Made by a program: the position numbers and the translations under genes. This document shows positions 5,950 to 63,888 of a stretch of DNA of 64,000 bases, piece after piece. The DNA comes from Dimorphilus gyrociliatus (lineage: Eukaryota > Animalia > Annelida), in NCBI GenBank assembly GCA_904063045.1, contig CAJFCJ010000070.1, positions 133,502-197,501 on the forward strand, in the 5' to 3' direction. Every line of letters begins with the position of its first letter. The stretch's first letter is position 1. The notes under the pieces are model-generated. The model saw only the letters and a list, made by a program, of their open reading frames with translations, was not told the DNA's origin and did no database searches.

Positions 5950-6863
5950 ATTGTAATATTTTCAAATTTAAAAATCTTGAAAAGTACTTTTACTGATTGA
6001 AGATATTGAGCAGTATGCTATTTTTAAAATTTGAAGTTTATGTAAATGTTTACATTTTATTTTAGATAAAATTGATATTTTTGTTTTTGATGTCAAGATC
6101 AATACGAAGTGGAATTTTTTTAAAAGATATATCCTTTTAAAGTGTGTTCACTTATATCAAGAATTTTAAGAAGTTTAATCATACTTATTACTTTCAAATT
6201 GTGAAGATTATTTTCCTAAGATTTAAATGAATAGCATTGTTAATTGTGATTTTTTCAATTTGGCTGAAAATGCAACTTTCCATTTTTCTAGAACTCAACG
6301 ATCCAAAAAAAATTTTAAATTATCAAGCCGAATTATTTCTGTAGAATTAATGATTTCGCTTAAATCTTTCAAATTAAAGTTACTTTTCTACAATTGTCTA
6401 TCACATTCTATTGAACTATATATGGAATATGTACAATTGTTAGGACAATTTAATTCGTCACTTTCCTCTCTACAATTCACAAATTCTAAAAGTTTCAATC
6501 ATTTTTCTTTCATTTTTACATTTAAAATAATTAGAAAGAAAAAAATTGTCTAAATTTTCTTTTATAAAAGAAAAGAATTTAGTATAGATCTTATAACGAT
6601 TCTTTCCATCACAAATTTGAACAACTGATATGCAAAAAGAAATAAATTTGCACTTATATTCACCTTTCTCCACATTCAACATTTATACAATTTTCAAGAT
6701 CCAGAAAAGGAGAATGAATTCTATTCCTTAAATTTCCCATAGTATCATAAATTAGTTTACATTGTGCAGAATAAATATTTCTTAATAGTCCTTTTGGATT
6801 GTATGACTGATATTCATTTCTTTTTAAATATTTCCAAGATACTTTATTAAAAAATTTGAGCAC
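5950..6863 (-). pseudogene. GRL101/LGR-type receptor remnant 1 (LDLa linker, LDLa, start of LRR)
   Basis: CKLIYDTMGNLRNRIHSPFLDLENC, GEYKCKFISFCISVVQICDG and YFKCKNERK align with CRVQYDSWGNLRTRPHFPFHNLFMC, GEYLCYLERFCISIQQFCDG and FFKCKNEKH of the intact gene at 61400-61730. Frameshifts and stops are present. Confidence 0.8.
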
Positions 6864-7047
6864 CTTTTTATAGTGTAAAAATAAGTTTGTTTTTTAGTCA
6901 TAAAATGCTTGGAAAAGTCAGGAACTCTAATAAAACGATATAGACAACTAATTCCAACTTAAAATCTATTAACTAACATAAAAAAAATGGAAAAGATTCA
7001 GCCTATAATATTAGATTTACTTTTAAAAATTAAGAATATACTTTTAT

Positions 7048-11239: not shown

Positions 11240-11313
11240 NNNNNNNNNNCAGAACACAATGATTCGACTATATTTAAATATTTAAAAAAATAGTAAATTG
11301 TTTAAATTACATA

Positions 11314-12492: not shown

Positions 12493-12531
12493 AATTTTTG
12501 AATATGTGTTATTGGGATATGTAAATGCATT

Positions 12532-13005: not shown

Positions 13006-14995
13006 TCAAGTTTCATTTTTACAATGTTTAGACATTTCCATTGAGCTAACAAAACTATATGTTCTACTGGAAAGCTTTTTAATTGGAAATTTTGAAGATT
13101 GGCGCCATGTATAAATTATACCACCAAAAATTCCAATGAGAATACAAATAGCAATTATTAAGCCAATGCCAAGTCCAATTTTTAAACCAGTTCTATCATC
13201 AGAAGTCACAATCTTTGTGTTTATATCTAATGAAAACTGTACACAAGTTTAAGATATTAGATAGAAAAGATAAGAGCTCAATAGATAATAAGAGAATAGA
13301 TAATATAAGAGTAGAGATTTATACCTTTTATCAGATCAGTTTGGCATACAAAGGGAAAGATATTTTCAGAGCAAATATGGCTTCTCCGATGGCCATACAA
13401 AGAAGTACATAATGTCACACAATGTCCTTCTCTGTCATCAATATGATAAAAATATCAAAAACCTAAGTGATTTCCATTTTCCCAAATATAATTACCACTA
13501 TTTCCTCTCTTTAGGCCAATCCATAATCCCTCCATAAAATTAGGTAATTATTTTGTGGCATATTTTTCAATGAAAAAATTTTCTTCAAATGATGTTACTT
13601 CTGCTAAAGTGCCATTAATTCTTCTGCAAAATGCTTTTCAAAATTTACAAATATTTTCATTTCAAATACAAAACATTTATTATCAAACACTTTCCAAATG
13701 CCAGATTGAGAAAGTTTTGTGGGACAATGTCCTCATTCTGGGCTAGGAGTTGTTGGATAAGGCAGTTTTGGAACTTTGCATATGTAACCTGATGTTGAAT
13801 GGCTATCACTACACAAGCGTCTCCTCCAGGAGCCAGATGTTTCTTGATGCCCACCATTATAAAGCACAACACATTTGCCCTGTTTATGACCAGTCCTGCT
13901 CCAAAATTGAAATGTTAGAGGAGTGTTATCCATCCAGTTATATGGACAGCCATAGTCTTTCCAAAATAGACCAATCTTCAAACTAACAGTATTTGGATAT
14001 CTTTTAGCCATCATAGCTAGCCAAACTTGTTCTGAAAGGTCCTTAATACTGACCAGTCTGCTTTTGCTCCAGCCTTTTCGAATACATCCATGAAGTGCTT
14101 CTTTAAATGAGTTGGTTTTGTGTTCATCAAACAGATAGCAATAACTGCCATGACTGATCCACTTTTCACTATTAGGGCAAAGTCCATGAACAGAAGAGGT
14201 TGTCAGTGGAATGCCAGCTTGTATTTTACATATACTTTCAAGCTTTGTGCTACAAGGAAAGCCTTTCCATTTTCCATTTGGTGAAAGAGCCACACAGTGA
14301 TCTTCATCTCCAGGATATACATCCCAAATTGTAAAACCACTGTTGTATGATCACTCCAGTTATATAAGTCTGTAGCATTATTCCTATACATTCCAATCCA
14401 AATGTGATAATGTAGTCCTTCATTTAATGACATAGAATGAACAGAAGCCAAATTCATTTCCTAAAAAGTGTAACACTTAATAGAAAATAATTGTTAATAA
14501 ACAATCAATTGATTTACCTGATTTTTACAGGAATTTAAAGATTCTTTCCAGGTTTTCTTGTCTTTTTGTATACTATAACATCCATCCCCTAGAAATTCTC
14601 CTTTCTGACAAATTGTTTTCTTTGGAGGGGTTGTAGATGTCAAATTAATTTGATCTGAGTTCAAATATATAATTAAAAGCAAGTCAACAAAGGTCTAAAA
14701 TCCTAATCTTAAAATACATTAAAAGAAGGACAACTCAAAAACATGTTTTTGTGATAAGCTTTACATGTAATGGTATATACCTTTCTGGATAAGACAGAAA
14801 GCATCCCCAAATGCATTGTTTAACCCTAACTTTAACCTAGCTCTTGTCTCTGCCTAACCTTTGAGGACATTTTCTGCTAGCCCCTACCTTTCCAGATACT
14901 GCATACATAGCCTCTTCAAACTGAACGGTCACTTTCTTTCCAAACACCTGCTGTTAAACTTTGATAAGGGACTGCATTAGTTGACAGGAAATCAT
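13006..14995 (-). pseudogene. C-type mannose receptor-like (multi-CTLD, type I membrane) pseudogene
   Basis: At least three to four CTLDs (CYSIQKDKKTWKESLNSC, HIWIGM, WKGFPCSTKLESICK, WISHGSYCYLF, LWIGL) followed by TM GLKIGLGIGLIIAICILIGIFGGIIYTW. In-frame TGAs (about 14915 and 13733), a frameshift near 14335 and further lesions at 13400-13650. Confidence 0.88.
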
Positions 14996-15312: not shown

Positions 15313-15805
15313 ATGTATTTTTCAAAAAGTCCAATCTGCTGTACTTTACATATAACGAGTGAAGAAGCCAAAGGATGGGGTTTTTCATTCATAGTTTTCG
15401 GCCTATTAATATCACTAATTTGCATAATAATTTTAATATTTTATATTAAAATATGGAAGCAAACTTTAGATAGAAAGAGATTAATTAATAGAAATCAATT
15501 TAAAACTCAACAAAAGAAACTCAAATTTAATGCTTTTATCATTGTTGCTACAAATTTATGTTGTTGGTTTCCAATCTCCTTGTTAGGTAATTCAAACAAA
15601 CAAATAAACAAACGTCTCTTGAACGATCCTTTGTTCAGGAATATATTCTGTACTCTTTCATTTGGTGTTGAAGAAGGAAATCTATATTATGTTTGTTGTT
15701 GTCATCCTACCATTAAATTCAATCATCAATCCCTTTATATACACTTTAAGGGATGTGAAATTGTATTATGAAAGGAATCAGGCTAAACTCAAGAAACATA
15801 TGTAA
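15313..15805 (+). pseudogene. GRL101/LGR-type receptor remnant 2 (orphan last two exons, ECL2-TM7)
   Basis: Exons 15313-15586 and 15639-15805 (52-nt intron) read openly: PICCTLH...GWGFSFIVFG...VATNLCCWFPISLLGIYS...LPLNSIINPFIY*. No 5-prime exons are found upstream. Confidence 0.85.
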
Positions 15806-18317: not shown

Positions 18318-18376
18318 AACTACATTATAGCAATGATTATAAAAATGAATAATAAATATTTATCATTTGCTCAACG

Positions 18377-21596: not shown

Positions 21597-22987
21597 TATA
21601 TTAATTTACTTCTTTTTCCATTGATTCTTCTGATTTTTCTTAAGCTACAAGAGGTTTTTTAACGAATTCCCTCTCTGTTTGCTTATGAATTTCTGTCTTA
21701 TTTCTCATTTAGGCAATCATTATCAAGATCATCCTCAGTTTCCTTATTATGCTCTCTCACTCAAATGTACAGTTTTACTCTAACCCTAACACTAACCCTA
21801 ACCCTTGTCACTTTTTGTCTATGCACATTATTCTGCTATCATTTCAACTTGGAAGTTCAACTTTAACCTGAGGATATAAAATTATATTACATGTTTTAAA
21901 CTTATCTCTTTTCTCGGCCCTAATAACCTAACCATTCGAGTCTTTTCTTCCAACTTGATTTTGCAACTTGGCTAAAACTGCCTTCAAATAATTTTAAAAC
22001 TAAAACTGCTAGTGATTATTCACATTCCTCATATTGTTAACTGGATTCCCTAGTAGTTTACTTATAACCCTGAAATATAGATTTCATATTTCTAAACATT
22101 TTAATAACCAAAAATATGTTTTTCTCGCAAATAGACTTTACTTTTAGACTGTGGAAGAATGATACTCATCAATTATACAATAAAACATCAGAGGGAGAAA
22201 AATTTTCTGGAATTGCTCAAGTTTCGTTTGACAACATTTTTTATAATGTTAATCCAAAGTTCATTAGGATAAAAGAAGTGGACCTTTTAGGTCAATACTT
22301 TGGATTTAGTCAAGGAAGTCAAATTTTTTGATGAAAAGCAGAGATCAATAACAACAGTAAAATCTGTAAACTTTTATGATACTTGCTATTATTTATTTGT
22401 TTCCAACAAGAAATATGATGTTTATGAAATTGAAAGCTTTTGCAACAGAAATGGTCTATCAATTGTTGATTTATCATTTATCAATACACATTATATTATT
22501 TATTTATTATTCATTGCAAAAAGATATTTAACATATTCCAAAAGCTAGACAAACAAGCATGGACTGAATGCTTTCATTTGATTTCCAATGATTTATTAAA
22601 ATTATCTAGAATTAAAAATACCAAATGTTCTAGTAAATATAAAAAGTATGTTTGTCAGTTTCTTCTAGGTATTGCATTTGGACAAAAAAAGTCTATGGAT
22701 GATATTAATGATAATACATTTGAACAGATATTGTCAATAAAAGAACAACCATTATTTCCTGGCTTCCTTCTAATTTCAACCAATTCTTCTATTGTTCTAA
22801 AGAAAGCTGTTATATTAATATCATTTTTGTTTGCGATGGAATTATTGATTGGAGAATGTTTGGACAAAAGTGAAATATATAATCAAGAGAAAAATTGTCT
22901 TGATAATTCTGATGAACAAAACCAACATTTCCGTTAGTGTTAAAAATCAATGTACAAATAAGTGTCAATTTTTTGACATACATTAAA

Positions 22988-23021
22988 ATGATTGACTGAT
23001 TGATTGATTGATTGATTGATT
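22988..23021. repeat. (GATT)n microsatellite
   Basis: Direct sequence; a second (TTGA)n tract lies at about 25221-25241. Confidence 0.9.
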
Positions 23022-23390
23022 CAAAACTAGTTTAGCTAACTATAAATCTATTGACACACTTTCTGTTGAAATCACCTTTAAGAATAATTTTACATACACA
23101 TCTTCTAATCTTGCCACAGAGTATTGTAAACGTACCATATGTGACTTTAAATGCTCTGACGAGAATGAACTTTGTCCGCCCTCTTGCCAGCTATGTGAAG
23201 ATTATAGCTACAATGGTAACTGATTGATAACTGAAATATGGAATACTAAAGGTTTACGTTTCTAAAAAATATATAAACAGCGTGTCGCAAGCTAGCCAAT
23301 TTGCATCTTTCTTTTTCAAAAAATTCTCCTATTTTTTAATTCATTCAATTTTTAAAAATTTTTGAAAAGGATTATTTTTCAAAAATATAT

Positions 23391-24025
23391 TGTACAACTT
23401 TGGTTATATTTTACATGCTTGAACTCTATTATTTTATGCAACATATACATGTACATCTTAAAACCTACGCAAGAAAATGCTATAACATTGGCCAAACATA
23501 AGTCTGATTAGTCAGCTTGAAGGCTCATCTTTAATTACCAATAAAGGTTTGGCCAAGTTATAATTTAATTAACTTGCCTAGGGTGTGGCCAAGTTATAAT
23601 TCAATTAACCTTCCTAAATGTTGAACCTTGTAACATCCTGTTACTAAAGATAAATATGAACTACACATTTCGGCAACTGTAAAGTGATGATTGGATGTCA
23701 GAGACAAACCTCAAAGTATATAAATCCTCATTATTCTCATTTGGCATGCAGCTTCCATCTGGACCCAAGGACCTGGGAAAATCATCTGGAAACAACCTCC
23801 ACTGGAACCATCCATCTACTCCTCAACATTGGAAGACAGTTTGGTAATTTGGCAACCTGCTATTACAAACTATCTACTCTGCTATTGAACTCTCATATTG
23901 TTACTTGCTTAAGTATTATTATTGCGAATAAACCATTTTAATTTAAACATTTGTTTAAAGGTTCGAGTAGAACCAGTATTGTTATAACTTGCAAACGCAT
24001 AGATTTTGCCAGCAAGAGCAGTACA
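23391..24025 (+). mobile_element. Solo LTR, family C (635 bp)
   Basis: TGTACAAC...GCAGTACA termini, internal AATAAA and 4-bp TSD ATAT (23387-23390, 24026-24029). Confidence 0.88.
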
Positions 24026-26495
24026 ATATTTATATATATATATATATGTATACCAGTTTATTTTATCTTATCATTAAACTTGAATAATTCTACATTAAAA
24101 CAATTTCTAACTGAATTTTATTTCCCCAATCTTATATTTCTACAACTTTCAAATGTCTATTTTGAGATTGGATATGTATCAAAATCAATTTTTAATCTAA
24201 CACAAATTCAAAGTTTCAAACTGGAAAATGTTCATATTGAATCACGTGATAATTATATTTCTTTTTCTGGTATTATTCAATTACGTAATTTACACTTGAA
24301 TCGGATAAACATACATTATTTAAGTAGTGAATCATTTTTTAAACTTTCAAAACTTAAATATTTGAAAATAATCAATTGTCCAATTAAATCTATTGAAGAA
24401 GATGCATTTAAACATATTTCTAATCTAATAAGTTTGATATTTCATCGGGTAGTTCTTCCATCAAATTTAACCAAGAATTTTTTTAAACCATTAATAAAAC
24501 TTGAGTATTTCCGGAGTGAAAATTTCAAACTATGCTGTTTTATATCACAAATTCTTTCTCAGAAGATAAAATGCTATCCATTCATTTCAAATAATCAAAT
24601 TTGTGAACTATTACTAGGTTCACACGTGCTCAGAGTGTTTACTTGGATTTTAGGAATATGTGGATTAATTTTCAATATCCTATCAATCTTCTTGAGAATT
24701 TTCACATTCAAAAAATCAACAGCTATATTTTATTGTACTCTAGCATTTGCTGATTTGGTAGGATCTATTCAAACTGTAATATTTGCAATCAAAGACAGCG
24801 AACTTAATGGCATATATATGGAAAATGAAAGTTTATGGAAATCCAGCAAACTATGTTCTATTGTAGGCTTATTTTCAACATTTTCGCTTATTCTATCAAC
24901 TACCAGTTTATTATTAGTGACTGCAGAAAAATATAGCGAAATTGATAATATAGGCGTTGGTAAATTCAGCCTATTAAGAGTAGTTATTTTATCATTATCT
25001 AGCTGTCTTTTTGCATCGATATTGGCTGTGTTACCTTTATTCCTCTATAAAGTGAGCAACAGTATATTGTTTTTCTTCCATTTGTATAATTTAATAATTC
25101 ACAGGCCTACTACGAGCAATTTTCCACCTGTGTGTTTTAGTAAATCCACTGCTCTTTACAGGCATGCTAATATCACAGATTTTGAAACAAAGAAAACTTA
25201 ATAACAGAAATAAAAGGTCATTGATTGATTGATTGATTGAAATTAAGAAAAACCTTGTAGAATGATTATTGCTTTCATTGCAAACTGCAGTTTATTGAAA
25301 ATATTCAATTGGAAACAAATAATAAAAGTAAATTTGTTATTTCATACTTTCATGATCACTCATTCACACCTTTTTTTCAATATAGATTTAATATTTTTGA
25401 AAGGCCTATACAAGAACTTTATAATACAAGATGAAGATCAAAAACCATTTGAGAAAACAGATACAAACAAAAAATTGACTTGAAAGATTTACAACATATA
25501 CATTCTTTCCTTTTGTCCAATGACAGCAATGGATTACTGTGTAAAGAATTCATATTCACTCAATTTTAAAGAAAATGCTATTTATCCACTGGCTAGTGAT
25601 TAATTACACATATATTTGTTACATATTCATAATCAAATCATTTTTTTCCCTTCAGAAGAGATGTTATTACTATTCTTATGACGCTATTGAATGTTTTAAT
25701 GAACAATACCAACAAAAATACATGTTCGATTTTGGATTTTATATTAGGCAGGCGTTGCAAAAAGAATATGTTCAAAGAAAAATGGGTGATCAATTTGTTT
25801 GTTCAAGCAACAAACAACTTTATACATTATCACCTATGAATCATATGTACAAATCATAAATATATATATATATATATATATATACTGCATATATTTAATA
25901 AAACATTAACAACTATTGAAATTTCATCCCTTCAACTTTACAACCAGTAATTCCTTTTCAAAATTTTCTAAATGCCCAACATTTGTATTTTCACCCAAAC
26001 CTCAATCTAGATTGGAAACATTGAAATCACTTTAGCTTAACCTAACTCAGTTAAGACTAACTTGAACATCTCCATAGTAATTTAATAGCTACGAGATTCA
26101 GGGTCAAAGGTTACAACTCACAAGTATCATTTCCCCATTGATTTTCACATATAGAATTTTCACATAATTTTTTATAATAAATAAGATCCTATATAACTTT
26201 ATTAAAATTTCATAGCATTGTTTTATTTTGTCATCAAATATTCATTATAGTTACAATACATATTTTCATTTTGCAAGATTTTGTCTCATTTATTATTTCA
26301 CGATTCATGATATGAATGAATTGAATTGAATTAATGATATTAATGATTAAACTCAATATTGCCCTGCTAACTCTTTTATACCATAACAACAAATCTCCAA
26401 AGGATATAGCCAAAATACCAAAAGGTCTAAAGTAACACATATTTAAATATTCAGCTATTCAAAACAACACTGAAAAAATATATGAACCTCGATAC

Positions 26496-40999: not shown

Positions 41000-42110
41000 T
41001 TCAAGTAAAATACTTTGGAAAATTATTAAAAAATACCATAATTCAGTATTAGATGATGATTTTGATTTTGAATGTTTACATAACACTGAATGTACTCATG
41101 TGATCAATCTAGAATGTTTGGATATTATATATTCACTTGGAGTTTTTTCAGTAGTGTTGAATTAAACAATAACATTTATCTTTTGGTTAAATATAGACAA
41201 AAAAAATATGATAGAAATGATTTCTGTAAAATAATCAATAAATTGAAGAGAACTGAAATTGAAAATAGATGTAAAACTTTATGTTATCACTTAGCTTATA
41301 AAAATATCTCCAATTTAGTTGAAAATCTTTCTCAAATCAGTGATAGAAGTGTATTTGATTGTTGGAATGAGACATTTAACAAGTTGTCCCTTTCTATGAA
41401 AATTAAATGTAAATCTTGTTATTTCATTTCAAATGTGAAATGTATGAGAAGATGACAATTGTTAATTTTTTCCCCTACTAATCTCTTAATCCGCCATTTT
41501 GTTTTATTGTACAGATTTAACATTGGATAATAATCTTTATGCTTATATCAAAGAATTAAATTTCTATAAAGTTGTTTTAATGGATGAAGCTGTGTTATAC
41601 AAAGCAATTTCTAGAATAAATATTGCTACAATAGTATGTAAAAATCTGGGATTAGGACCAGCTTATCTTCAAAAATTTAATCAAAACACACAAAACCTCT
41701 ATCAAGAAAACTATATTAAAATATTTAAGAAAAATCCAGTTTCTTTGATAAATCATCAAACTTATTATAATTGCATTGCTGAAGAAGATTCAATCTTTGA
41801 ATGCTCATTTCAAATTATCAATTTTTTGGATAAAACTGTCACAATGAACTTCCATGCCAATTTTAAAATTGTAATTAATATCACATTATTATGCAATGAG
41901 CATAGAGTTTCAAGTTGGTGATTTGATAATGATAACAATATTATTCATAAAATCTTCTTCATCTTTTCTATCTCAAGATTCAAACAAGAAGAATTTACAA
42001 TTAAAATTGAAACTATTTTAACAAACTCATCAAATTTTGGAAGGCTTTTATTATGGAAAAATCAATTTTGGCATACAATATACAATGATAATATCTTCAA
42101 CTATGACATA
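41000..42110 (+). pseudogene. Orphan CTL-like and SRCR-like extracellular exons (possible receptor remnant 4)
   Basis: ATIVCKNLGLG...YYNCIAEEDSIFEC is SRCR-like, preceded by a Cys-bearing CTL-like ORF. No downstream LRR/7TM is seen. Confidence 0.4.
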
Positions 42111-48619: not shown

Positions 48620-51025
48620 CTAGATTTTCAATATAGATTATTTAGTGTTGATGAGAGAATTTTGACAAAATCATAATTATACTGAATTTATTGGAAATTT
48701 GCAGATTTTTTATAAAAATGTCTGGTATCAACCAAGCATTCAATCATTTATATTTCAAAATATCATTCATTTATGTAAATCATTCACTTTTCAATATGGA
48801 ACAATCTACAATGTTTTAACTTTCACTAGTATGACAAACTTTTATTATGCAACAATGAAATGTTTAAAATCCAAAGGAAAACAAATGCCTTGTAGTTTTG
48901 AAATTAGTGAGGAGTATATAGTAAATTATCCAGCATCATTAGTAAAAGATGTAGGCTTAAATCATTATGGAGCATTGCTTATAAAATGTACTCATGAAAC
49001 TAATAATGAAAATGGTAATATTCATGTGTGCTACTGCGTGTCTGTAAAACTATTAAGTTTGTGAAATTACTGAATGTTTTAGAAGGCACTTAGTTGAACT
49101 GTTTAACATAAAAGGAATAGCCCATATTTCTACCAGCCGTGTTGAAGAAATTAGGAAAGAAGTAATCAAACAAAGGCTAAATGTGGTTCCTAGTATGGTA
49201 GTGTCAATGAAGAAAATTTTTGTATCCTTCAAGACAAATAGTTCAGGCTGCTAATCAACTTTTGAAGAACAAAATAGTTAGAAATTCTAGGCAATAATTG
49301 TTTCAAAGCTATTGAAAAGAGTTGAATGAGCACAAATCACAATTCAGGATATGCTGACTGGCAGAAAAATTTCATAAATTTCTAGTTTTACAGATTTTCA
49401 GTAGCATATATTGACATATAATTAATCTCAGTGGAAATTTTAAATAAATAGTTTGCAGGGATCAACAAGCATTTTTGTTCAACAGAGTTTGTTACATTCA
49501 CATAAGAGTTAAAAAAAATATCAATAAAACAGAGTGAAATGATTTGCAAAGAGAACAATAGTTCTCTTTTGTATTTACAATTTAAAAATGATTATTTTTT
49601 CAACATAATAAGAAAATTTTTGTCTCATTCAAGTGTCTTTCCTAATGGAATATCCAACTTACCAGGAAGTAGGATATCACTTTTTCTTTAATAGAATTTT
49701 TGGGTTGTTCTGTTTTGTTGTTCTTTAACAGAGATGAAAATTGTGAAGATAAAAGAAATAGATCAATAATTCTTCATCAAGACAATAAATCCAATGATTG
49801 AAAAGGGAGTATTTTCTCAGTTGACTTCCCTAGAGTCACTAGTATTGGAAAAGTCTGTTATAAATATGAAATATGGTAATTTTCTGGTGAAATATTTAAA
49901 TGTGTTGGAAAATCTTTCTAGTGAATATTTTCAGTTGTGTCGTTTTGCATGGAAATTTTTGAAATATGTTAAAAATTGTCAACCAAACAAATCACTATTT
50001 AATTCTTGCTCTGATTTATTAGAATCCATTTTAATAAGGGTCCTTTTATGGATAATTAATGTTACATCCTTTATTGAAAATTTCTTTTCAATAATATTTC
50101 AAGTCATTGTTTCCAATAAAAAATTAAATCCATTTCTTTTGAGTCTAGCTTTTGCAGATTTAAATATTTCAATCTATTTTATTTCAATAGGAATAGTTGA
50201 TTTAAAATTTAGAGGTAAATATGCTGAAAATGACTTCCAATGGAGGAATAGTTCTTTTTGTCCATTACTTGGAATTTTTGCTGGTTTTTCAATTCAATTA
50301 TCTGTGTTGAGTTTATTGTTTATCACAATTGAAAGATTTCAAGTAATCATATAACCTATGTGGAATATATTTAAACCTTACTATTTGCTGTGTATTGTGG
50401 ATTTTATCTGGATTTGGTCACTTTTATGTTCAATTGTTCCATTATTTATTTATAGAGTATAGAAAAAGTTTAAAAAATACAACTGCATTTAAAAAATTTT
50501 TTTTTTTTAAATTTTTAGAGTTACTACACAAAAACTTCAGTATGTTTTACTCTTCACATCTCTAGCAATAAAAATGAAGGATGGGTTTATTCTTTTATAG
50601 TTTTTGGCTGTTTTATTGGATTTGTATGTTTGTCAATAATAGCCCTATATTTTAGAATATGGAAAAGAACTTTAAAATCTAGAAATGTGTTGGAAAAATC
50701 TGTATTTAACACATTACGAAAAAAAATTAAACTTCGATCGTTTTTAGTTGTAACAAATATTTTGTGTTGGTTGCCAATTTCAATTTTAGGTCATTATTTT
50801 TTCAAATTTTCCATTTCTAAAATTATTTTCTATGGTCTTTTTTTCTCTATAGGAATATATTCAGTTTTTTTCAAATTAATTATATCTAATCAAGTATACA
50901 CTACACTTGTTGTTGTTATGTTACCAATAAATTCAACTATAAACCCTTTGTTATATAACTTGAGTGATGTCATTAAGTATATTAAAAGTTTGTCTTGTAG
51001 AGCAAAAGAGGCAGGGTTGGTTTGA
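48620..51025 (+). pseudogene. GRL101/LGR-type receptor remnant 5 (late LRR, complete 7TM with one nonsense codon)
   Basis: FQLCRFAW...CSDLLES...LAFADL...WRNSSFCPLLG...TIERFQVII then TAA (50352-50354). PMW...LFIYR continues in frame, followed by two spliced exons VCFTLH...TNILCWLP...NPLLY. Most LDLa/LRR repeats are deleted upstream. Confidence 0.88.
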
Positions 51026-52600: not shown

Positions 52601-53000
52601 AAACAAATAAAAAAATTTTTTATCTAACAATAAAAGAGGCAAAAAATTATTCAAAAATAATACCACTAAACCAAAAACTAATCTATAGAAAATTTAGGCC
52701 TAATACTCTCTCACTAGCATTGCCAACAGGCTATCTTAATAAGATGTAATCTATGTAATAAGCATGGAGGCAACAGAAAGCATTCACAAATCATTGCTTT
52801 TACCCTAACCCAAATACAGAAAAAGGGACACAGAATTGAGTCTAGGTCTTCCTGTCTTACATATTATGAAAAATACTAAATACTTACTTAAACATCAACA
52901 TGTTTATGATGGAAAAATAAAGATGAGATATTTGTAATTGCTAAAAAACTCATGTGAAAGATAGATAATTTTTCTTATCAAGTTTATATATGTTTAAAAG

Positions 53001-55027
53001 GGGTACAGGAGAAAACGTCCACTGGAGAAAACGTCCACTGTTTGGAAAAAACGTCCACTGCTTGGAGAAAACGTCCACTGGAGAAAACGTCCACTATAAA
53101 ACTTCAAAGTAAGATATAAGATATTTGATAGATGGGGTTTTTAGAGCAATTTGACAGAAAAAAATGAATAATAAGAATTACAAATATTTAAATATTAATA
53201 TATTGATTAAGTAAAAACAAGCATTATAACAAGAATGATTGACAACAGTGTAACAACATTAAAGAATAAAGGTATTTTAAACTGGTGAATAAATGTCAGA
53301 AGCTTTATCAAGTAAGTCCAGGGAGGTAATTGAGGCAATTTCAAATTGTTCCCATAAGCTGAATATTTTGCTCTGAATATTCTGATATGCTTTTCTTTGC
53401 TGTCTACAAATTTTCTTTTCACTCAGTAATTTTTTATATAGCTTTATCAGATCAGCTTCTCTTTTCAGTTCATCTAAAAGCAAATAGAATGCAGTGTTAG
53501 AGCAAAGATTCTTGTTAAGCCTGTGATGCCATCCTTCAAGATCATTATTTGTCCTTATAGCCTCACCATAAACAGACCATACCTCTGGTTTATAAAATCC
53601 ATTTATCCATTGTGTCTCAATGTACTCCAATAGAGACTTCATTTCAATAGGACTTATTTCTTTAATAGTCCAGTTCAGCTGGTCTAAACTTCTTTCTTGT
53701 CCAGTTTGCCAGTCTTGTACAATTATCTAGAGATGGAATAACTTCACCAGAACTACAATGTTTCACCAGAACATCTTCAGCTAAACGTTTTCCTGAACTA
53801 CTGATATCTTTATTACAAGCATTTTTTAGTTCATTCCTAATCATTATTTTTTGTTCCAAATCAGGTACTCTTTCATGAGAATGGGATAACTTTCCAGGCT
53901 AAAAACTGTTCCCATGCTGACTAACTGTTGCTGAACATTTGTTTCTTTTGTTCCTAACACTGCATATCCAGAATGTTGTCTTGTTTCTTTTTTCTTTAAT
54001 ATTGTAGCAGAAATTGTTGAAAAGTAGCAAATCTTTTCCTTTCTGGCTCATTCCCTTTAAGATTTTAAATGAATAACTTTCTTTCTCACAATCTGATTTT
54101 GGAGAAACTATAAATGAAACTTCCATCATATTATTTTGCTGAGCTGGAAGATCTTCAACTAAAACATTGTGTGATTCCATAATACTGCCATTTGTATCAT
54201 TTCCACTTGAATTTCCACAATGATTTTCACAAACAATAGTTTGCTCATTTCTATTATTTTCTGTATCAAAATTTGGTGTTTGTCTTATTTCTTCATTAGC
54301 AGATGCACTAGAAGGTAGCCTTTGAAGTGCAACAATGCATTTCTTCATTGATATGTCACAGCAAATGTTACAATAAAATGATTGATCTGTGAAAAAATAT
54401 AAAAACATATTTGTAAGGAAGGATAGTGACAAAAAACTTAAACAAACCTTTATAATCCAAACATTTTTTATGTATTTTAAATAAATGACAGCAAAGCTGA
54501 CATTTCTCTTGATTTTGTCTTCCATATATTCTCTCTTCACAAATGTAACAAATTGGTGCCATGTTCAATTTGGAATCTCTATCAATAACCAACTGTATAA
54601 ATTTAAAAATTAAACAATTAACAATAATGATAAACAAAATGGCTGCTATAAAAATAAAGCTAATTTATAAATAAATCATTTCAACACAATATTCTATAAC
54701 TTACTGATATCAATTCTAAAGTTTGTGTTTTTTCTGATGGTTTTCAATAGTGAAATATATTTCAAACTGCAAAAAATTCTGAAAAATTGTAGATGAAATA
54801 TGCACAATATTCACTTTCCATGAAAAACATAGAAGATCCCAGAACTGTTTCCTGTCTGGATTTCAAAATGGCTACCAAAAGTGATTGCATTATGGGAATG
54901 TATTGGATATATCTCAAAATCAATAATAAAAATTTAAATTTGAAAAAGTATTTTTTAATATATTCTTCACATAGTGGACATTTTCTCCAGTGGACGTTTT
55001 CTCCAGTGGACGTTTTCTCCATAATTC
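53001..55027 (-). mobile_element. MULE deletion derivative (2027 bp): PHD-FLYWCH kept, DD core deleted
   Basis: Ends GGGTACAGGAGAAAACGTCC and (reverse complement) GAATTATGGAGAAAACGTCC. TSD GTTTAAAAG (52992-53000, 55028-55036). MAPICYIC...CQLC...HKKC|DQSFYCNIC, TAG at 53899-53901, and a junction near 53660 that joins RPAELDY directly to the WSV/RTNNDLEGWH block. Confidence 0.93.
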
Positions 55028-55529
55028 GTTTAAAAGTGTTAGAAGGTAAAATATTATTTGAAAACAAGTATGAACTATTAATTTGATGTTTCAAGATTAA
55101 AAAAATAGTCTTCCATGTATTTGTTACATGTGAAATAAAAATTCATCAGATTTTATCTTTTTAAACTTTTGACCATTTGAAGCTTTGGTAAATGTATAAA
55201 AATGGCAGCATTCCCAGAGCTTCTCAGTCTGTAATTTAATATATATGATAGAATAGAAATGACAAATGAATGTGTACAATATGCCGATGTATTTTGAAAT
55301 CATATTGTTTTTGTTTGTCAATACCAAAGCCTTAGCAGCTCTAGAGGTGACAATATTGTACATTCAGCAATAGCGAAAAAGGGAGAAGCAGGAAGTATTA
55401 CACCCTGTAATCAAAACAAAAATATAGTCAAACTTAAGTCTAAACATTCATTGTGTATTCAGAATTTTCACAAAACAAACAAAGATATTAGTTGTATATC
55501 ATGTGATACAATAATGGATGCTAAACTTT

Positions 55530-57720: not shown

Positions 57721-59642
57721 ACCTACAGATTTACTCTGAAAATACAGAATTAAAGGTTGTCAACAGCCAACAGCAAGTTGAAAAATCTCAATATTTTCAG
57801 TCATCAGCTGACTATTGAAAGTACAAGACAGGAAACTTTTTGCAGAATGGGGAGAGTTTAAATGGTATTAAGCCTAAAATACATGAAGCCTTTTAAATAT
57901 CAGTCTGGTAGCAACTCATTGAAAAAAGTGAAAACTATCTCTAAAATATTGTAAGGTTTAAATTAGTTAAAAGTAGACTAGTGCAGAAAAGATTCCTTCA
58001 CTCTTGTTGAGAATTATTACACATGTTAGTTTGTGACACAGGGATAGCTTAGGCCAAGAACTGCTACTCTAGATAGTAGTTATTAATAGGCACACTAACC
58101 TTAGCCCTAACAAAGTTCATATAGTGAGAGAAATAACCAGATTGTCAGTAACAACAAAATTGATAAAATCTCTAATTCTAATTGTACTTTCCTGCTGAGG
58201 TTGTAGGTAAGTACTGGTCCAAATAGAACCGAAGCAGGAGTAAGCCTCTTAGAAGAGAGATGTAGAATTGAGGGAGGATGAATATAGAACCAAAATGTAA
58301 GAATAATATAACTGTATTCTAAAGTAATACTAGACCTGTTCACTAAGGGAGTTGATTCAGGACTGAATGCCTGTTACTGCCTACGCCCTGCTTTTATACA
58401 ATTCCTTATCAGTTGTTTATACCTTGGCTGTCAACAACAAGGGTCTAACCCCAGATAAGGATTGTTCACAACAAACAGGGTCAAGGGTTATCATATTATG
58501 CAATAGTGATGTAAACAACAACAACTGTGTGTAGGTTACCCCTCAAGGGTCAATTCTTACATCATATTTATGTAAATAAACACTTGTTGTTGTTGTCAAC
58601 ATGTTTGTTATGTAATATCTTATCCTTTGCTTATAAAAGGGGTTGATTCTGGCAGTTGGGTACCATCTACCCTAGAGGCAACATCTACTTCAACACTTCT
58701 ACCATATAGTAAGTATCATTTATAAAATATCTATAAACTATAGTTCATAAGTGTACACTAATCAGTTTATTTTACTACAAAAACTTTTATTACAAAACAA
58801 ATTAAGTTAAAGATTTTTTTTGTTTTTTTCATGAGCTTTTTTCTGCAGCATACTTCTTAGAAACATTCCATAATCAAAAATATTTCTTTGATGACTTTCA
58901 CTAGAAAAATCAATAACCTTCTTTATATCCATATAATACTTATTACTTTTTCTCTAAAATGCATTGATTTTTTGAAAATAAATGAAAAATATTCATTTTT
59001 TTAATAGATCAATAAATACATTAACCAAAATATTCTCAATTTGTATCTTTCCTTTAAAGCATAATGATTTACTGAATAGAAAATTCAGTGATTTAATAAC
59101 TGTTGTAGAAAGTTTAAATAATTCAAATGTCTGAAAGATTCTATGCATATAACATTCATCAACTCTTCTAATAACATTAAATGGTATTGGATATGAAATA
59201 TGAGTAGCTACAACAGAATTGAAAGAAGAAATAGCTATATGTAAAAAAGAAAAAAGTCATTAATACATATTTATGTTACAGTTTTTATTCCAAGCTTTTC
59301 CCAACAGAATACACAAAAGGGTTAAGTCTAAGCATCTCTGAGTCTATGTGTTTGTGTATCCAAACTGAATACAGTTCAGCAAAAGATTCCTACTTAATTA
59401 ACTTATATTTAATGGGTTTCAATTAAATTTACAAATGCAAGTAAAAATGTATGCATGTATCCATCTTCACAACATCAATGTGCTCACACCATTACCCAAA
59501 ATAATGATGGTACTTAAATACCCAACTTCACAAATACAATATTAAACTATTATTTTCTAAGAATATTGAAAAAAAATTATACCTTCTCCTTGCATTTTCA
59601 AAAATTGCATTTTAATAAATAATTTACTGGAAACAGAAAAAA

Positions 59643-62600
59643 TTAGCCAACAGGAAATGCATTACTTTCATTGTTCACCAACCTCTGATTTTCAGCTCTT
59701 TCTCTTTTAACTTTTTTATATTTAGAGTACGAATTAGAAAGAAAAACAACTGCATTAACAACAGAATTCACAGGCAGAAATATAATGAGAATTAAATAAT
59801 AAATGTTACTATTTATATCAAATTTTGTGGATATTCCTAAAATAGCAAGAAGAGATGATGGCATCCAACAAATTAAATTTGTAAACATAATTATAGAAGC
59901 ACTTTTTGATAATTTGGTGTTTTTTCTCTCATTATTTAAAAACTTTGTAAATTTCTTTCTTGATTTTCTAACAGTTAACATAATAAAAAAGTAACACCAT
60001 AATATTATCATGTTATACACAAAAAGCAGTACACCAAAAAAGAAAAATGAAAAAAACCATTGATTTGATGAATCTCTTTTAATATAAATATTGAAACAAA
60101 TTGGTGTTTTTGAAAAGAAATTCTGAAAAAAGATTCCATTAGTAGTGTCATTTGAAAGAGATTCCTTTTACTGGATAAAAAATAGCTGGTGAATATCCCA
60201 ATACAAATGACACAATAAAATTTATTAATATAATCCAAAATTTCCTTTTCACCAAAATGATTGACTCTTTTATGATACTATTTAATACCAAAACTCTCTC
60301 AAGTGTCAATAAAACAAGACTACTTGATGACAATATAATTGCAAAAGTCATTAGACTTCCTAAATATTTACAAATCAAGCCGTATCTCCAGTTGATGTCA
60401 TCATCAAGGTAATTGTCTCCATAGTAGCCATCAGTTATTGCAATGGTGAGAATATAGAGACAAATGAAAAAGTCTCCAACAATCAGTGTTGATTGGTAGG
60501 CCAACTTTTGTCTTTCATAGATATGCAAAACAGTTATTGCCAAGAAATTTCCCAAGAATCCGCCAATGCCATAAATCCAAAAGAGAAATTTCAAAAGTTT
60601 TGTTCCCAAAAGATTGGAACATGTTTGAAAGCGTAAAGGCCGTGGCAGACAGGATATATTTTTCTTAACATAAGCCCAAGCCAAACAGCATAGATTGAAA
60701 CTGATGCTAAAGACTTTTTCAATATGTTGCAATTTATGTACAATAAATTTTCCCTGATCAAGTGGAAAGTCTGTTGAATTCATATGCAACTCTTTCAATT
60801 CTGTCAAGTGTACAAAGAAGTTTCTTTCAATATCTTGTAATTTATTTCCTGACACTTTAAAAATCTGTAGATTTTTCAATTGAATTGAATTGTTTGAATG
60901 CAAATGAGTAATTTTTGTGTGAGAAATGTCTAGAAATCTCAGCAAATTATTGTTGAATTTTGTTAAAAAGTGAATGTGTCTTATTGGATTATAGGAAATA
61001 TCAATGTACTGAATTAACTTTGATGAAGTCTTGTCACTCAGAGTAGTCCAACTCAAAAGGCTTGTATTCTTCAGAATGATAATTACAATGTTAGGGAAGT
61101 AATTGATTTTAAAAAACCTCTGTTTTGTATTCTGAATGTTGATTAATGTCAGAGAAAATAGTTGTTTTTTCAAATTAATGTGAAAATCTCCAAAAATGAT
61201 TAACGATTTGATTTGTTCATCTAAAATTGTCAGTTCACATATTTCATTTGATTGTTGTTTGTTTTCGCAAACAAGACTGTATGTCATGTTGTTATTACAT
61301 AGTTCATTGTAAACCTTTGGTTGCAAACATAACAGCTCATCACTGCCATGTAAACAATCTATGATGCCATTGCAAACTTTTTCCATTAAAATATAATGCT
61401 TTTCATTTTTACATTTAAAAAATCCTTTGGGTTTGAATTCATCTGTTTTTCATATATTTTGTGTAGTCAAACTTGTCCTTAAGTGAAAACTGTTTGTTGA
61501 TTGCTTACCACAATAAATTTCATCATCACCATGGAAACAATGATTGATTCCATCACAAAATTGTTGAATTGATATGCAAAACCTTTCCAAATAACACAGA
61601 TATTCACCCTCATTACAAAATGATAAATTACACATGAATAGATTATGAAATGGAAAATGTGGCCTTGTTCTTAAATTACCCCAAGAGTCATATTGTACTC
61701 TACATTTATTTTCATCAGTGAAAAGAGAGCATGTTAAAGTCCTGTTGAATTTTTTACAATAACTTTCATCTTCATCTTTTTCATTATGACAATCTTTTCT
61801 GTAGTCACAGAGAAAATCGTTTGAAATAATATTTTTGGTGCATGATTCACTTTGTACTGTGAGGAGTTTAATTTCAATGATTGATTAAAATTTGGTGATA
61901 AGACATTTGTAATTTATACTCTGATAATTATGATTTTCCTTTGAGAATTCCAGATTTTCATCACTTTTATCAAAGCAATTTCTCTCATTATTACTCAAAA
62001 TTGTATCATTTATGCATTGACCATTTAAACAAGCACTATTAAAGAGTTTTTTTTAAGTTTTTTGATTTTTAATGAGTATTATTATTTTAGAGAATTTGTC
62101 AAGTGATGATTTACCCTTACCCCAACCCAGACAAGACTTTTATGTTAAAATTTCAAAAAATGCACATTTTTTGTTAGCTAAAAGAAAGGCTAAAAGAAAA
62201 TGAATGGCATTTTCTTGACAGCAACTAACTTGTTTTAAAGTTTCATCCAAAACAAAATCTCAGAAGTATCAAAGTATTACCTTGTGTTATCTTCACATGT
62301 TTTCCTATCTGTGAAATTATTTTTTTTAATAAAGCAAACAAATATTCATAGGAAGTAGTATTGAACATACTACAAAAATCCTCATCTGAACCATCAGGGC
62401 AGTTTTTGACAAAGTCACACACCAATTGGTGACTAATTTTAACTGCAGAATTAATGCAATAAAAATTTAGCTTAATATTCTTTTTATCACAGTTCAATTC
62501 ATCTTCTTTCAATGGACAATCATAATCTCCATCACATAAATATGCATTTGATATGCACATCCCAACTGAACTACACAAAAACAAATTTTGAGAGCATAGG

Positions 62601-63888
62601 ATTTTTACAGGTTTTACCAAATATTTCATTAATTCCCCATAATTCTTCCTTTCTACAACAATAAACTATATTGTAAGCATATGAAGACAAGAATATAAAA
62701 AAAATACTTGGCTGTTTATGACATATAAAATATTTTGTCTGAATACTACAATCTTTTTCTTGTATTTGAATAAAAGAGAATGCACTAGATTGAAAATTCA
62801 TTGTATAGCAGCCATAGAAAGATTTTGACAGAAACATATGTTTTTTTTTTTTAAGAAAATGTTCGAATATTTCTCTGTTTTGTTGGCAGGCCTGTACAAA
62901 TCAGTTATTAACTAAAAGTTTATTTTTGAATGTATTATTATTATGACTTTCATTAAAGTATAAAAAAAAAGGGTAAAATTTCTTTCTTGGCAGTTTACCT
63001 TATTAAAATCCAAATATACATTTGATTTATACAAAAGAGGAGTTTTGCTTTGCGTTACATAATACTTTTGAAATGTTGTATTGTTTTGGATAAGATTTAA
63101 TGAAAATGCTCCTGTAAAAGTAGACACCCATTTATTTCTAATCTATAAAGGTTGAAAAGTGCAAAAATATCAAATACTATTTGGAAACAGGTAGGAACTA
63201 TCAATTTGATGTTTAAAAACAAGATGTAAAAGCATAAAAGGAAATTGAACATTTGAAGATGGTAAATCAGTAAGTGTTAAATTTTTATTAGCACACTCCT
63301 TTTCAATTTGTTTTAAGGATAAGGATTTTATATTTTTGAAGATGTAATAGCAGACATCAAATATTGTGTGTGCCTCCTCTTCACCACAATCTATTACTAT
63401 CATTGAAAAATAGTTGTCATTTTAGATAAAATTTTGAAAAATGTTGGTATAGGACCTTTTTTTTTTGAACACTTAATGTTATATAAAGTATTTTTTGCAA
63501 ATGCTCTGTATAAATTAGAAAGGTAAAGTTATTATGGCTGGATATTTAGGAGTTGAAATTAATAGATTTTGCATTTAAACACTTACCCTTTAGACGAATG
63601 TTTGATTTTGCAATCTTCTAGTTTTGATGTAGAGCTATTACAAGAGAAACTCTCTAAATGTATACCAGAATCAAATTGAAGAGGTATGACAAATTGATCA
63701 CTTTCAACAGGAATAAGAGTGCCATAATTGAAACCAAAACTTTTACAAATAACTTGAATTTCTCTATATCTTAACATTATAAAATGTTTCCAAATATTTG
63801 ATACAAGAACTAGAAAAATTCCAGTATATTCCAAATAATTATGTTTTTCACCAAAATATAGATTGCCATCTTTCTCATTGAACATCAT
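59643..63888 (-). CDS. GRL101/type-C2 LGR-like GPCR: SRCR-CTL-LDLa(x6)-LRR-7TM, apparently intact, 5-prime end may lie beyond window
   Basis: SRCR VICKSFGF...HLESFSC...LEDC, CTL VCYYIF...EKEC...DCSIQTKYFICHK, six LDLa repeats, LRRs, hinge FNLCCLAW...TCSNLLG, and 7TM TLERVL and TNLICWMP. Phase-consistent introns at 60123-60171, 61443-61508 and 61857-61919 plus a 28-nt exon at 62281-62308. The exon structure at about 63400-63530 is uncertain. Confidence 0.9.

What the first reader, a model, noticed from the sequence alone, without database searches (positions are those of the whole stretch)
5950..63888. Birth-and-death array of SRCR-CTL-LDLa-LRR GPCRs: one intact receptor among four or five decayed paralogues
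Seen: homologous receptor pieces at 5950-6863 (-), 15313-15805 (+), 22116-25140 (+), 48620-51025 (+), possibly 41000-42110 (+), and an intact copy at 59643-63888 (-). They share an ECL2 phase-0 intron and a C..YD.WG...H linker but differ strongly in protein sequence. Established: GRL101/type-C2 LGRs have LDLa arrays plus LRRs and are expanded in lophotrochozoans; SRCR and C-type lectin domains are typical microbial pattern-recognition modules. Inference: this is a rapidly turning-over family of lectin/scavenger-tipped GPCRs, possibly pathogen or chemical sensors, reshuffled in a TE-rich island.
Basis: partly seen in the sequence, partly recalled or inferred. Interest (0 to 1): 0.78.

Follow-up and report, generated by a model that had tools for sequence, protein, structure and literature searches.

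The report
Mixed graveyard of GRL101-type receptor genes
This stretch of the small marine worm Dimorphilus gyrociliatus holds one open-looking and four broken genes of a family of at least 150 hormone-receptor-like surface receptors, but the five are distant cousins that ended up side by side, not one locally duplicated array.

Summary
Partly confirmed. The window (G000:C70:133502-197501, Dimorphilus gyrociliatus) does hold LDLa-LRR-rhodopsin 7TM receptor genes with an SRCR-fold module and a degenerate C-type-lectin-like module.

- **Open copy:** 59643-63900 (-) reads open through 11 GT-AG exons. Its 5' end lies beyond the window, in sequence that reads N.
- **Multi-domain pseudogenes:** 22.1-25.2 kb and 48.7-51.0 kb.
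- **Fragments:** 5.8-6.9 kb and 15.3-15.8 kb.
- **Not a member:** the "possible" copy at 41.0-42.1 kb.

The "birth-and-death array" reading fails. Each copy has a much closer relative elsewhere in the genome (59-78% identity, against 28-45% between window copies). They fall in separate well-supported clades, and an AU test rejects their monophyly (p 9e-58).

The family is genome-wide: more than 150 scored loci and 300-650 loose candidates, mostly on small TE-rich contigs. The shared ECL2 phase-0 intron is a family-wide trait.

New here: the open copy and an inverted neighbour just outside the window share a 1676-bp, 99% identical gene-conversion tract between otherwise saturated flanks.

The architecture is not new. 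Amphioxus, Lingula and clam GRL101-like proteins carry SRCR and/or Lectin_C heads. GRL101 expansions and CTL-GRL101 clusters are published for snails.

The scan has noted this family before on other pieces of this genome.

The parts
59643..63900 (-). Open-looking GRL101-type receptor, visible part. It has 11 exons and 3405 coding nt: SRCR-like, CTLD-like, six LDLa-like modules, LRRs, hinge, 7TM.
   Evidence: Exon-by-exon frame check: all ten introns are GT-AG (49-245 nt), phases are consistent and there are no internal stops. Pfam by exon.
63587..63900 (-). SRCR-like exon. The micro-exon 63456-63505 supplies the last strand and the fourth Cys.
   Evidence: Pfam SRCR E 1.6e-4, below the cut-off. 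Family profile against PDB SRCR proteins E 7.9e-11. 14 of 30 members hit Pfam SRCR. AF2 pLDDT 85; VIA Z 8.7 to CD163 SRCR.
62708..63396 (-). C-type-lectin-like module in three exons: 63178-63396, 62999-63111 and 62708-62891.
   Evidence: hhalign of the exon-A profile against the genome's own CTLDs gives 83% probability, E 9e-6, in register. Exon C aligns in register but weakly. CD302 is a weak PDB hit. No Pfam Lectin_C hit.
61509..62652 (-). LDLa array (modules 1-5) with the conserved C..YD.WG...H linker. Exons are 62371-62652, 62281-62308, 61920-62035 and 61509-61856.
   Evidence: Pfam Ldl_recept_a E 4.6e-14 and 8.2e-5. Splice model.
60172..61442 (-). Main exon: LDLa6, LRRs, Cys hinge, TM1-TM4 (ERV in place of DRY).
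   Evidence: Pfam LRR_8 2e-8, Ldl_recept_a 7e-5, 7tm_1 4e-4. phmmer against LHCGR/FSHR/TSHR/RXFP1.
59643..60122 (-). TM5-TM7 exon after the 49-nt phase-0 ECL2 intron. CWMP is present; NAVVF stands in place of NPxxY.
   Evidence: Pfam 7tm_1 E 2e-10. Sequence.
60022..61697 (.). Gene-conversion tract shared with the inverted paralogue at C70:201947-203622, outside the window.
   Evidence: blastn 99.1% over 1676 bp. Flanking exons are 55-67% nt identical with dS saturated.
63943..64000 (-). End of an upstream exon, cut by the window edge. No GT donor is visible at the expected place.
   Evidence: Comparison with relatives L004, L005 and L010, which splice ...ACA A|GTAAAA here.
58810..59256 (-). 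Possible spliced cytoplasmic tail exons (kinase-like remnant), conserved in the inverted paralogue.
   Evidence: tblastn to the Pkinase tail of amphioxus P0125, E 0.057. No Pfam hit. Low confidence.
48666..51022 (+). Pseudogene. It keeps an SRCR-like exon, a frameshifted lectin-like remnant (49448-49688), a truncated main exon (49770-50456) with TAA at 50352-50354, the intron 50457-50518, and an open TM5-7 region (50519-51022).
   Evidence: The nearest kin, C106:63111 (68% aa), matches only from window 49811 onward.
22074..25229 (+). Pseudogene. It has a degenerate SRCR-like exon (conserved Cys lost), lectin-like exons, LDLa remnants, a TE-like insert (23841-24001), an open LRR-TM1-4 exon, the intron 25052-25104, a TAG at 25138-25140 and a TM7 remnant. 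TM5-6 are deleted.
   Evidence: Nearest kin C92:22465 (59-64%).
15313..15802 (+). Lone 3' fragment (TM5-TM7) in two exons with a 52-nt phase-1 intron (15587-15638). No TM1-4, LRR or LDLa lies upstream.
   Evidence: Nearest kin C12:2687072 (73%).
5807..6893 (-). Decayed fragment: linker, LDLa, LRRs and hinge with at least four frame changes. No 7TM.
   Evidence: Nearest kin C22:829549 (78%). No flanking inverted repeats.
41490..41918 (+). It is not a detectable family member.
   Evidence: Pfam SRCR only E 0.021. No family-profile hit without window rows. Singleton in the genome.
11240..11249 (.). Assembly gap at the end of a repeated TE segment.

Best explanation
**What it is**
The window is a TE-rich island of the Dimorphilus gyrociliatus genome. 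It has collected members of several old subfamilies of one very large family of GRL101-type (type C2 LGR) receptors.

**Domain order (shown)**
- In the relatives of the open copy, about 400 residues with no Pfam match and a signal peptide come first.
- Then one SRCR-fold module, one degenerate C-type-lectin-like module and about six LDLa modules.
- Then LRRs, a Cys-rich hinge and a rhodopsin-class 7TM.
- A short kinase-like tail may follow.

**State of the copies (shown)**
One copy is open in everything that can be seen. Two are multi-domain pseudogenes and two are fragments.

**Origin (tree shown, mechanism inferred)**
The copies are not a local tandem series. Each has closer kin on other contigs. 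The island was therefore most likely filled by dispersed (ectopic or segmental) duplication, followed by deletion and decay.

**Gene conversion (shown)**
The open copy has exchanged a 1.7-kb block with its head-to-head neighbour. The block runs from just upstream of LDLa5 through LDLa6 and the LRRs to TM5.

**How it works (inferred from RXFP1, GRL101 and snail work)**
The ectodomain captures an extracellular ligand and the 7TM couples to G proteins. The size and turnover of the family point to environmental sensing (chemosensory or immune), not to a hormone axis.
For: - **Architecture:**
- **SRCR:**
- **CTLD-like:**
- **Family size:** 97, 150 and 135 loci scored at E below 1e-20, with 653, 398 and 435 first-look candidates. 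The SRCR-like exon is found at 121 places and the lectin-like exon at 97, at fixed spacing upstream of main exons.
- **No local clade:** identity rankings. An ML tree places the window copies in three separate starred clades. AU test dlnL 323, p 9e-58.
- **Decay:**
- **Conversion tract:**
- **TE context:**
- **Organism:**
- **Ancient head:**
- **Literature:** PMC6573481 (29-132 GRL101 genes in apple snails, tentacle expression), PMC12297450 (CTL-LDL-LRR GRL101 cluster with truncated members and presence/absence variation), PMC11863921 (LGR types).
Against:
- The open copy's 5' exons are in sequence that reads N.
- The visible upstream junction lacks a GT donor.
- Its TM7 motif is NAVVF, not NPxxY, and DRY is ERV. 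It may itself be non-functional.
- The lectin identity is only moderately supported.
- Family counts are limited by the scoring cap and may be inflated by uncollapsed haplotigs, for example the near-identical C75/C99 and C150/C173 pairs.
- Ligand and coupling are pure inference.
Confidence: 0.75

Rival explanations
1. Local tandem birth-and-death array. The copies arose from one another by duplication in place and then diverged fast.
For: Five family pieces lie within 58 kb. Recent local duplicates do exist elsewhere in the genome, for example pairs 8-10 kb apart on C36, C21, C34 and C90 with equal scores.
Against: Every window copy has closer kin on another contig: 59-78% identity against 28-45% between window copies. 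They sit in separate starred clades and the AU test rejects their monophyly.
Confidence: 0.08
2. The short pieces are gene fragments picked up and moved by DNA transposons (Pack-MULE style), not genes that decayed in place.
For: Two MULE/FLYWCH transposases lie in the window. One complete MULE with TIRs at 52993-53097 and 54971-55035 abuts a weak 28-residue family match at 55050-55133.
Against: No inverted repeats flank the 5.8-6.9 kb or 15.3 kb fragments. The two large pseudogenes keep collinear multi-exon structure with introns, as expected of in-place decay.
Confidence: 0.12
3. The open copy is also a pseudogene or a non-signalling relic, so the window holds no working receptor.
For: There is no GT donor at the exon junction upstream of the SRCR-like exon. 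NPxxY is replaced by NAVVF and DRY by ERV. TM5-TM7 differs from the inverted paralogue at dN/dS about 0.7, against 0.18 in the LDLa exons, although dS is saturated.
Against: 3405 nt over 11 exons stay open with consistent GT-AG splicing. CWxP is intact. The conversion tract shows recent sequence exchange but says nothing about function.
Confidence: 0.3
4. Assembly artefact: collapsed or duplicated haplotigs and sequencing errors create the apparent multiplicity and the defects.
For: C70 is a small 283-kb contig with a gap. Most family members lie on small contigs. Some contig pairs carry near-identical copies.
Against: The defects are kilobase deletions and multi-frame decay, not single-base errors. 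The window copies are 28-45% identical, so they cannot be haplotypes of one another. The inverted twin is 99.1% identical, not 100%, and only over 1.7 kb.
Confidence: 0.05

Closest known systems
GRL101 of Lymnaea stagnalis / type C2 LGRs (classification as in PMC11863921, PMC4079206)
   Same: Multiple LDLa modules, LRRs, a hinge and a rhodopsin-class 7TM related to glycoprotein-hormone and relaxin receptors.
   Different: It has extra N-terminal SRCR-like and lectin-like modules. It belongs to a family of at least 150 loci, where most lophotrochozoans have a few. TM7 and DRY motifs are degenerate in this copy. Placement in the C2 clade was not tested by tree.
SudRes2 cluster of CTL-LDL-LRR GRL101-like GPCRs in Biomphalaria sudanica (PMC12297450)
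   Same: A lectin-headed GRL101-type receptor family in a cluster with truncated members and presence/absence differences. It is proposed as an immune or recognition locus.
   Different: The snail cluster holds 12 mutually paralogous genes. Here the neighbours are not each other's kin, the lectin module is below the Pfam threshold, and an SRCR module is added.
GRL101 expansion in ampullariid apple snails (PMC6573481)
   Same: A massive lineage expansion (29-132 genes) and a proposed role in environmental sensing.
   Different: In snails the copies sit in tandem clusters and are expressed in tentacles. Here no expression data exist and the local cluster is polyphyletic.
Amphioxus 'GRL101-like/RXFP1' proteins such as XP_078576616 (P0125); Lingula XP_013411505 (P0082); Mercenaria XP_053373490 (P0103)
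   Same: The module order SRCR, Lectin_C, LRR, 7TM matches, with LDLa modules present, and amphioxus adds a kinase-like C-terminal tail. The brachiopod and clam proteins carry CUB, Lectin_C, LDLa, LRR and 7TM.
   Different: Those modules score far above Pfam thresholds and a CUB domain leads. The Dimorphilus modules are degenerate, no CUB was seen, and the gene number is far higher.
RXFP1/RXFP2 (type C1 LGRs)
   Same: The LDLa-LRR-7TM layout. The best ESM Atlas cluster is 'Relaxin receptor 1' at 0.91, and RXFP1 is a PDB hit at E 6.5e-6.
   Different: C1 receptors have a single LDLa module and are single-copy hormone receptors.

Membership tests
LGR type C2 (GRL101-type) | Rhodopsin-class 7TM of the LGR group | tested here: met
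   Pfam 7tm_1 on both 7TM exons. The best solved relatives are LHCGR, FSHR, TSHR and RXFP1. The Atlas returns relaxin receptor and GRL101-like clusters.
LGR type C2 (GRL101-type) | LRR ectodomain and Cys hinge directly before TM1 | tested here: met
   LRR_8 E 2e-8 in the same exon as TM1-4.
LGR type C2 (GRL101-type) | Several LDLa modules N-terminal of the LRRs (C1 has one or two) | tested here: met
   Ldl_recept_a in three exons (E 4.6e-14 with two stretches, 8.2e-5, 7.1e-5). Six Cys-patterned modules in the splice model.
LGR type C2 (GRL101-type) | Falls in the C2 clade with Lymnaea GRL101 in a tree with C1, A and B references | not tested
   No reference GRL101 or RXFP sequence was placed in a rooted tree. 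In one search the long mollusc, brachiopod and amphioxus GRL101-like proteins join the same tree but without outgroups.
SRCR domain | SRCR fold | tested here: met
   AF2 model pLDDT 85. 56 of 130 chains reach Z 5 or more. The 42 listed at that level are all SRCR-domain proteins. Best Z 8.7, rmsd 2.6 over 89 residues, to CD163.
SRCR domain | Sequence match above the Pfam gathering score | tested here: not met
   22.4 bits against a cut-off of 26.1. The family profile does reach SRCR proteins in PDB at E 7.9e-11, and 14 of 30 members hit at E 0.01 or better.
SRCR domain | Six or eight conserved cysteines | tested here: not met
   Only three invariant Cys in the exon, plus one in the micro-exon.
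C-type lectin-like domain | Match to Pfam Lectin_C | tested here: not met
   None of 28 members hits. None of the genome's 138 Lectin_C matches lies at any SRCR-like or lectin-like exon place listed.
C-type lectin-like domain | Profile-level homology in register, with the conserved Cys framework | tested here: inconclusive
   N-terminal half: hhalign 83% probability, E 9e-6, CTLD positions 7-48. C-terminal exon: in register at positions 98-131 but 9.5% probability. CD302 E 0.34. The whole module could not be folded because it is split over three exons and joining was left out.
C-type lectin-like domain | Ca2+/sugar motifs (EPN or QPD, WND) | tested here: not met
   Not present in the three exons as read. 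If it is a CTLD, it is a non-lectin type.
Local tandem birth-and-death array | Neighbouring copies are each other's closest relatives | tested here: not met
Local tandem birth-and-death array | Intact genes mixed with pseudogenes and fragments | tested here: met

The most novel reading that the evidence does not exclude
Dimorphilus gyrociliatus was published as a streamlined genome with 211 class A GPCRs and only nine expanded families. It may in fact carry several hundred SRCR/lectin-headed GRL101-type receptors hidden in TE-rich, poorly annotated islands. These would form its main environmental (chemosensory or immune) receptor repertoire, diversified by dispersed duplication and by gene conversion between neighbours.
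Probability: 0.3. Interest if true: 0.65.

Novelty: new variant of a known kind. Interest (0 to 1): 0.42.

Why it matters
- GRL101-type receptors are orphans. Their repeated, independent expansion in apple snails, Biomphalaria and now an annelid suggests a recurring role as environmental sensors.
- This window adds two points. First, the SRCR/lectin head is an old bilaterian design, not a local invention. Second, in a famously compact genome the family is large, sits in TE-rich islands, turns over by deletion and exchanges blocks by gene conversion.
- The published GPCR count for this species (211 class A, PMC7854359) is hard to square with more than 150 cap-limited six-frame loci of this one family. 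The annotation probably misses many of them.
- For this window alone the result is ordinary: mostly dead copies of a known kind of gene.

Tried and rejected
- **Word-index protein search** with the main exon found only two unnamed ORFs, because full-length kin fall outside its length window.
- **Sequence beyond the window end:** C70:197502-200785 reads N. The 5' ends of the open copy and of its twin could therefore not be read.
- **Pfam Lectin_C** on lectin-like exons gave nothing.
- **A paralogue with the whole lectin-like module in one ORF**, wanted for a fold test, does not exist among 60 loci.
- **hhalign of exon profiles against amphioxus P0125:** the best local alignments fall inside its SRCR and Lectin_C domains but are not significant.
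- **Pseudokinase-like tail:** weak tblastn only, no Pfam hit.
- **Logan ORFs as expression evidence:** they come from another organism (best 38% identity in this genome), so they say nothing about transcription here.
- **Apparent frameshift in the 15.3-kb copy:** rejected as decay; it is an intron.
- **The stretch ending in ...YLFPN** in the lectin-like exon was first taken for TE sequence. This was rejected because FPNS is conserved in relatives.

Full report
**Organism and setting**

The window is G000:C70:133502-197501 of a 77.9-Mb, 349-contig assembly. GC is about 29%. The genome is Dimorphilus gyrociliatus. The annotated protein DgyrCDS9719 (CAD5121185.1) is 100% identical to G000:C14:366223-366750, and its contig length of 2,241,898 equals that of C14.

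**The assembly gap**

The ten N at 11240-11249 follow the last alignable base of a repeated TE segment. Other copies of that segment lie at 29599-29868, 39887-40155 and 4224-4300, and the sequence to the right of the gap differs from all of them. No receptor piece lies within 4 kb. No reading frame is affected, but linkage of the 5.8-6.9 kb fragment to the rest is unverified.

**The open copy, 59643-63900 (-)**

- Pfam by exon gives Ldl_recept_a (E 4.6e-14, 8.2e-5, 7.1e-5), LRR_8 (2e-8), 7tm_1 (4e-4 and 2e-10) and a sub-threshold SRCR (1.6e-4).
- Checking exon by exon, without joining them for any search, I found 11 exons totalling 3405 nt. All ten introns are GT-AG and 49-245 nt long, with consistent phases and no internal stop.
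- Two micro-exons (50 and 28 nt) are needed. The first carries the last SRCR strand and its Cys, and it is conserved in a paralogue.
- The ECL2 intron is phase 0 and 49 nt long.
- The gene is not complete in the window. The closest intact relatives (C99, C75, C40) have five more upstream exons with a signal peptide and about 400 residues with no Pfam match.
- The window shows only the end of the last of these exons, at about 63943-64000. At the homologous place there is no GT donor.
- The next 3.3 kb of the contig read N.
- TM3 has ERV and TM7 has NAVVF in place of DRY and NPxxY. CWMP is kept.
- Downstream of the stop, two ORFs conserved in the neighbour resemble the catalytic-loop and subdomain-IX regions of a kinase. 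The support is weak: tblastn E 0.057 to the Pkinase tail of an amphioxus homologue, and no Pfam hit. This fits earlier scan notes on other members (s1-080454).

**SRCR and lectin modules**

- The SRCR-like exon recurs at 121 places in the genome, 2.3-3.5 kb upstream of main exons.
- A 30-row profile finds only SRCR proteins at E 0.0011 or better in PDB: PIT54 at E 7.9e-11, then CD5L and LOXL2. MSR1 and Mac-2BP follow at E 0.6-0.9. Fourteen of the 30 rows hit Pfam SRCR.
- An AlphaFold model (pLDDT 85) aligns to CD163, CD6, MARCO, DMBT1 and other SRCR domains at Z up to 8.7.
- The module is therefore a true but degenerate SRCR with four Cys.
- The lectin-like module is split over three exons and recurs at 97 places. 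No member hits Pfam Lectin_C. None of the genome's 138 Lectin_C matches coincides with a listed SRCR-like or lectin-like exon of the family.
- Profile-profile comparison with 16 of the genome's own CTLDs gives 83% probability (E 9e-6) for the first exon, in register with CTLD positions 7-48. The last exon aligns in register but non-significantly.
- CD302 is a weak PDB hit. No EPN, QPD or WND motif is present.
- I read it as a probable non-lectin CTLD, with moderate support.

**The other copies**

- *48.7-51.0 kb (+).* It has an SRCR-like exon and a lectin-like first exon broken by a frameshift. No LDLa array and no N-terminal LRRs remain. Similarity to its closest kin begins only at 49811. An in-frame TAA lies at 50352-50354. 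The ECL2 intron is correct, and the TM5-7 region is open and reads through a 60-nt in-frame intron.
- *22.1-25.2 kb (+).* All module types are present as remnants. The LRR-TM1-4 exon is open and the ECL2 intron is correct. Eleven codons later comes a TAG, and then an out-of-frame TM7 with NPLLF. TM5-6 are therefore deleted.
- *15.3 kb (+).* Only TM5-7 is present. The supposed frameshift is a 52-nt intron that many relatives share, since their open frames end at the same residue.
- *5.8-6.9 kb (-).* Linker, LDLa, LRRs and hinge are spread over at least four frames, with no 7TM.
- *41.5 kb.* It is not a member.
- A 28-residue match at 55050-55133, next to a MULE terminal repeat, is too weak to count.

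**Not a local array**

Whole-genome six-frame searches show that every copy has closer relatives elsewhere.

| Window copy | Closest relatives elsewhere |
|---|---|
| Open copy | C46 60%, C75/C99 51% |
| 49.8-kb copy | C106 68% |
| 24-kb copy | C92 59% |
| 15.3-kb fragment | C12 73% |
| 6.6-kb fragment | C22 78% |

- Window copies match one another at 28-45% and rank about 39th to 143rd in each other's lists.
- An ML tree of 84 hinge-TM1-3 regions puts the three usable window copies in three separate starred clades, on both sides of a 97% split.
- Forcing them together costs 323 log-likelihood units (AU p 9e-58).
- The shared ECL2 intron is family-wide: nearly all hits end at residue 424-433 of the main exon.
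- In a joint FastTree with 142 public proteins, the Dimorphilus rows break into 31 pure clades interleaved with 51 clades of public rows.
- Most of the closest public rows are unnamed ORFs from read assemblies. The one tested, P0006, is at best 38% identical to anything in this genome, so it comes from another organism.

**Family size**

Every scored list was full to its cap at E below 1e-20. First-look candidates numbered 299-653, and 1036 for a longer query. About 80% of hits are on small contigs (C34 and above). Six to 14% of main exons carry stops. Near-identical pairs on different small contigs may be haplotigs, so counts are rough.

**Gene conversion**

Just outside the window, at about C70:200.8-204.1 kb (+), lies a head-to-head paralogue with the same architecture. 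It is 99.1% identical to the open copy over exactly 1676 bp (window 60022-61697, from the linker to TM5). On both sides the exons are 55-67% identical in nucleotides with dS saturated.

**Neighbourhood**

- LTR-retroelement gag-protease (27082-28485)
- MULE/FLYWCH transposases (37866-39275 and 53280-54564, the latter with TIRs)
- A C-type-lectin transmembrane gene (13009-14694, -)
- A single-exon rhodopsin GPCR (17340-18359, -)
- Fascin
- A caspase
- A 207-bp repeat with at least 30 copies

**Comparison with what is known**

- LGR types follow PMC11863921 and PMC4079206.
- GRL101 expansions of 29-132 genes with tentacle expression are published for apple snails (PMC6573481).
- A cluster of CTL-LDL-LRR GRL101-like genes with truncated members is published for Biomphalaria (PMC12297450).
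- Pfam on public homologues shows that the head is ancient. Amphioxus P0125 carries CUB, LDLa x10, SRCR, Lectin_C, LRR, 7tm_1 and Pkinase. Lingula and Mercenaria proteins carry CUB, Lectin_C, LDLa, LRR and 7tm_1.
- The finding is therefore a degenerate, greatly multiplied annelid variant of a known receptor kind. This window is a polyphyletic, mostly dead sample of it.

**Limits**

- Part of the contig is withheld.
- The spliced model was never joined for a search or a fold.
- Function and expression are untested.

Noticed in passing
L001/L002 = G000:C70:200786-204110 (just beyond the window end): A head-to-head inverted paralogue of the window's receptor. It shares a 1676-bp, 99.1% identical tract with window 60022-61697, while the flanks are 55-67% identical. 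This is a clean gene-conversion event.
   Followed up: yes
window 58810-59256 (-); L002:2055-2525 (+): Conserved ORFs downstream of the TM7 stop resemble a kinase catalytic-loop region and subdomain IX. They may be spliced tail exons. The amphioxus homologue P0125 has a Pfam Pkinase tail in the same position.
   Followed up: partly
L004, L005, L010 (G000:C40, C99, C75), first 1500 nt: Relatives of the open copy have five further N-terminal exons with a signal peptide and about 400 residues with no Pfam match, upstream of the SRCR-like exon.
   Followed up: partly
window 13009-14694 (-): A separate gene with at least two canonical C-type lectin domains and a transmembrane helix (Pfam Lectin_C E 1.9e-12). 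It is unrelated to the receptor family.
   Followed up: partly
window 17340-18359 (-): A single-exon 340-residue rhodopsin-class GPCR (7tm_1 E 4e-20) of an ordinary small-receptor type.
   Followed up: no
window 52993-55035: A complete MULE/FLYWCH element. Its terminal inverted repeats are built of tandem 16-18-nt subrepeats, and a 28-residue weak match to the receptor family lies just outside one end.
   Followed up: partly
window 47981-48187: A 207-bp repeat with at least 30 copies at 82-99% identity across the genome. It is probably a recently active MITE or SINE.
   Followed up: no
window 32898-34380 (+) and 44193-44948 (+): A fascin gene (Pfam Fascin E 8e-24) and a caspase-domain ORF (Peptidase_C14 E 1e-15) lie between the receptor remnants.
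   Followed up: no
public proteins P0001-P0081: All 13 of the closest public relatives looked up are unnamed ORFs from read-archive assemblies. P0006 is at best 38% identical to anything in this genome, so an unidentified other species also carries many such receptors.
   Followed up: partly
genome-wide: Many equal-scoring pairs of family members lie 8-10 kb apart on one contig, some of them inverted (C146, C13, C83). Others sit on two small contigs (C75/C99, C150/C173). These are recent segmental duplications or uncollapsed haplotigs.
   Followed up: no
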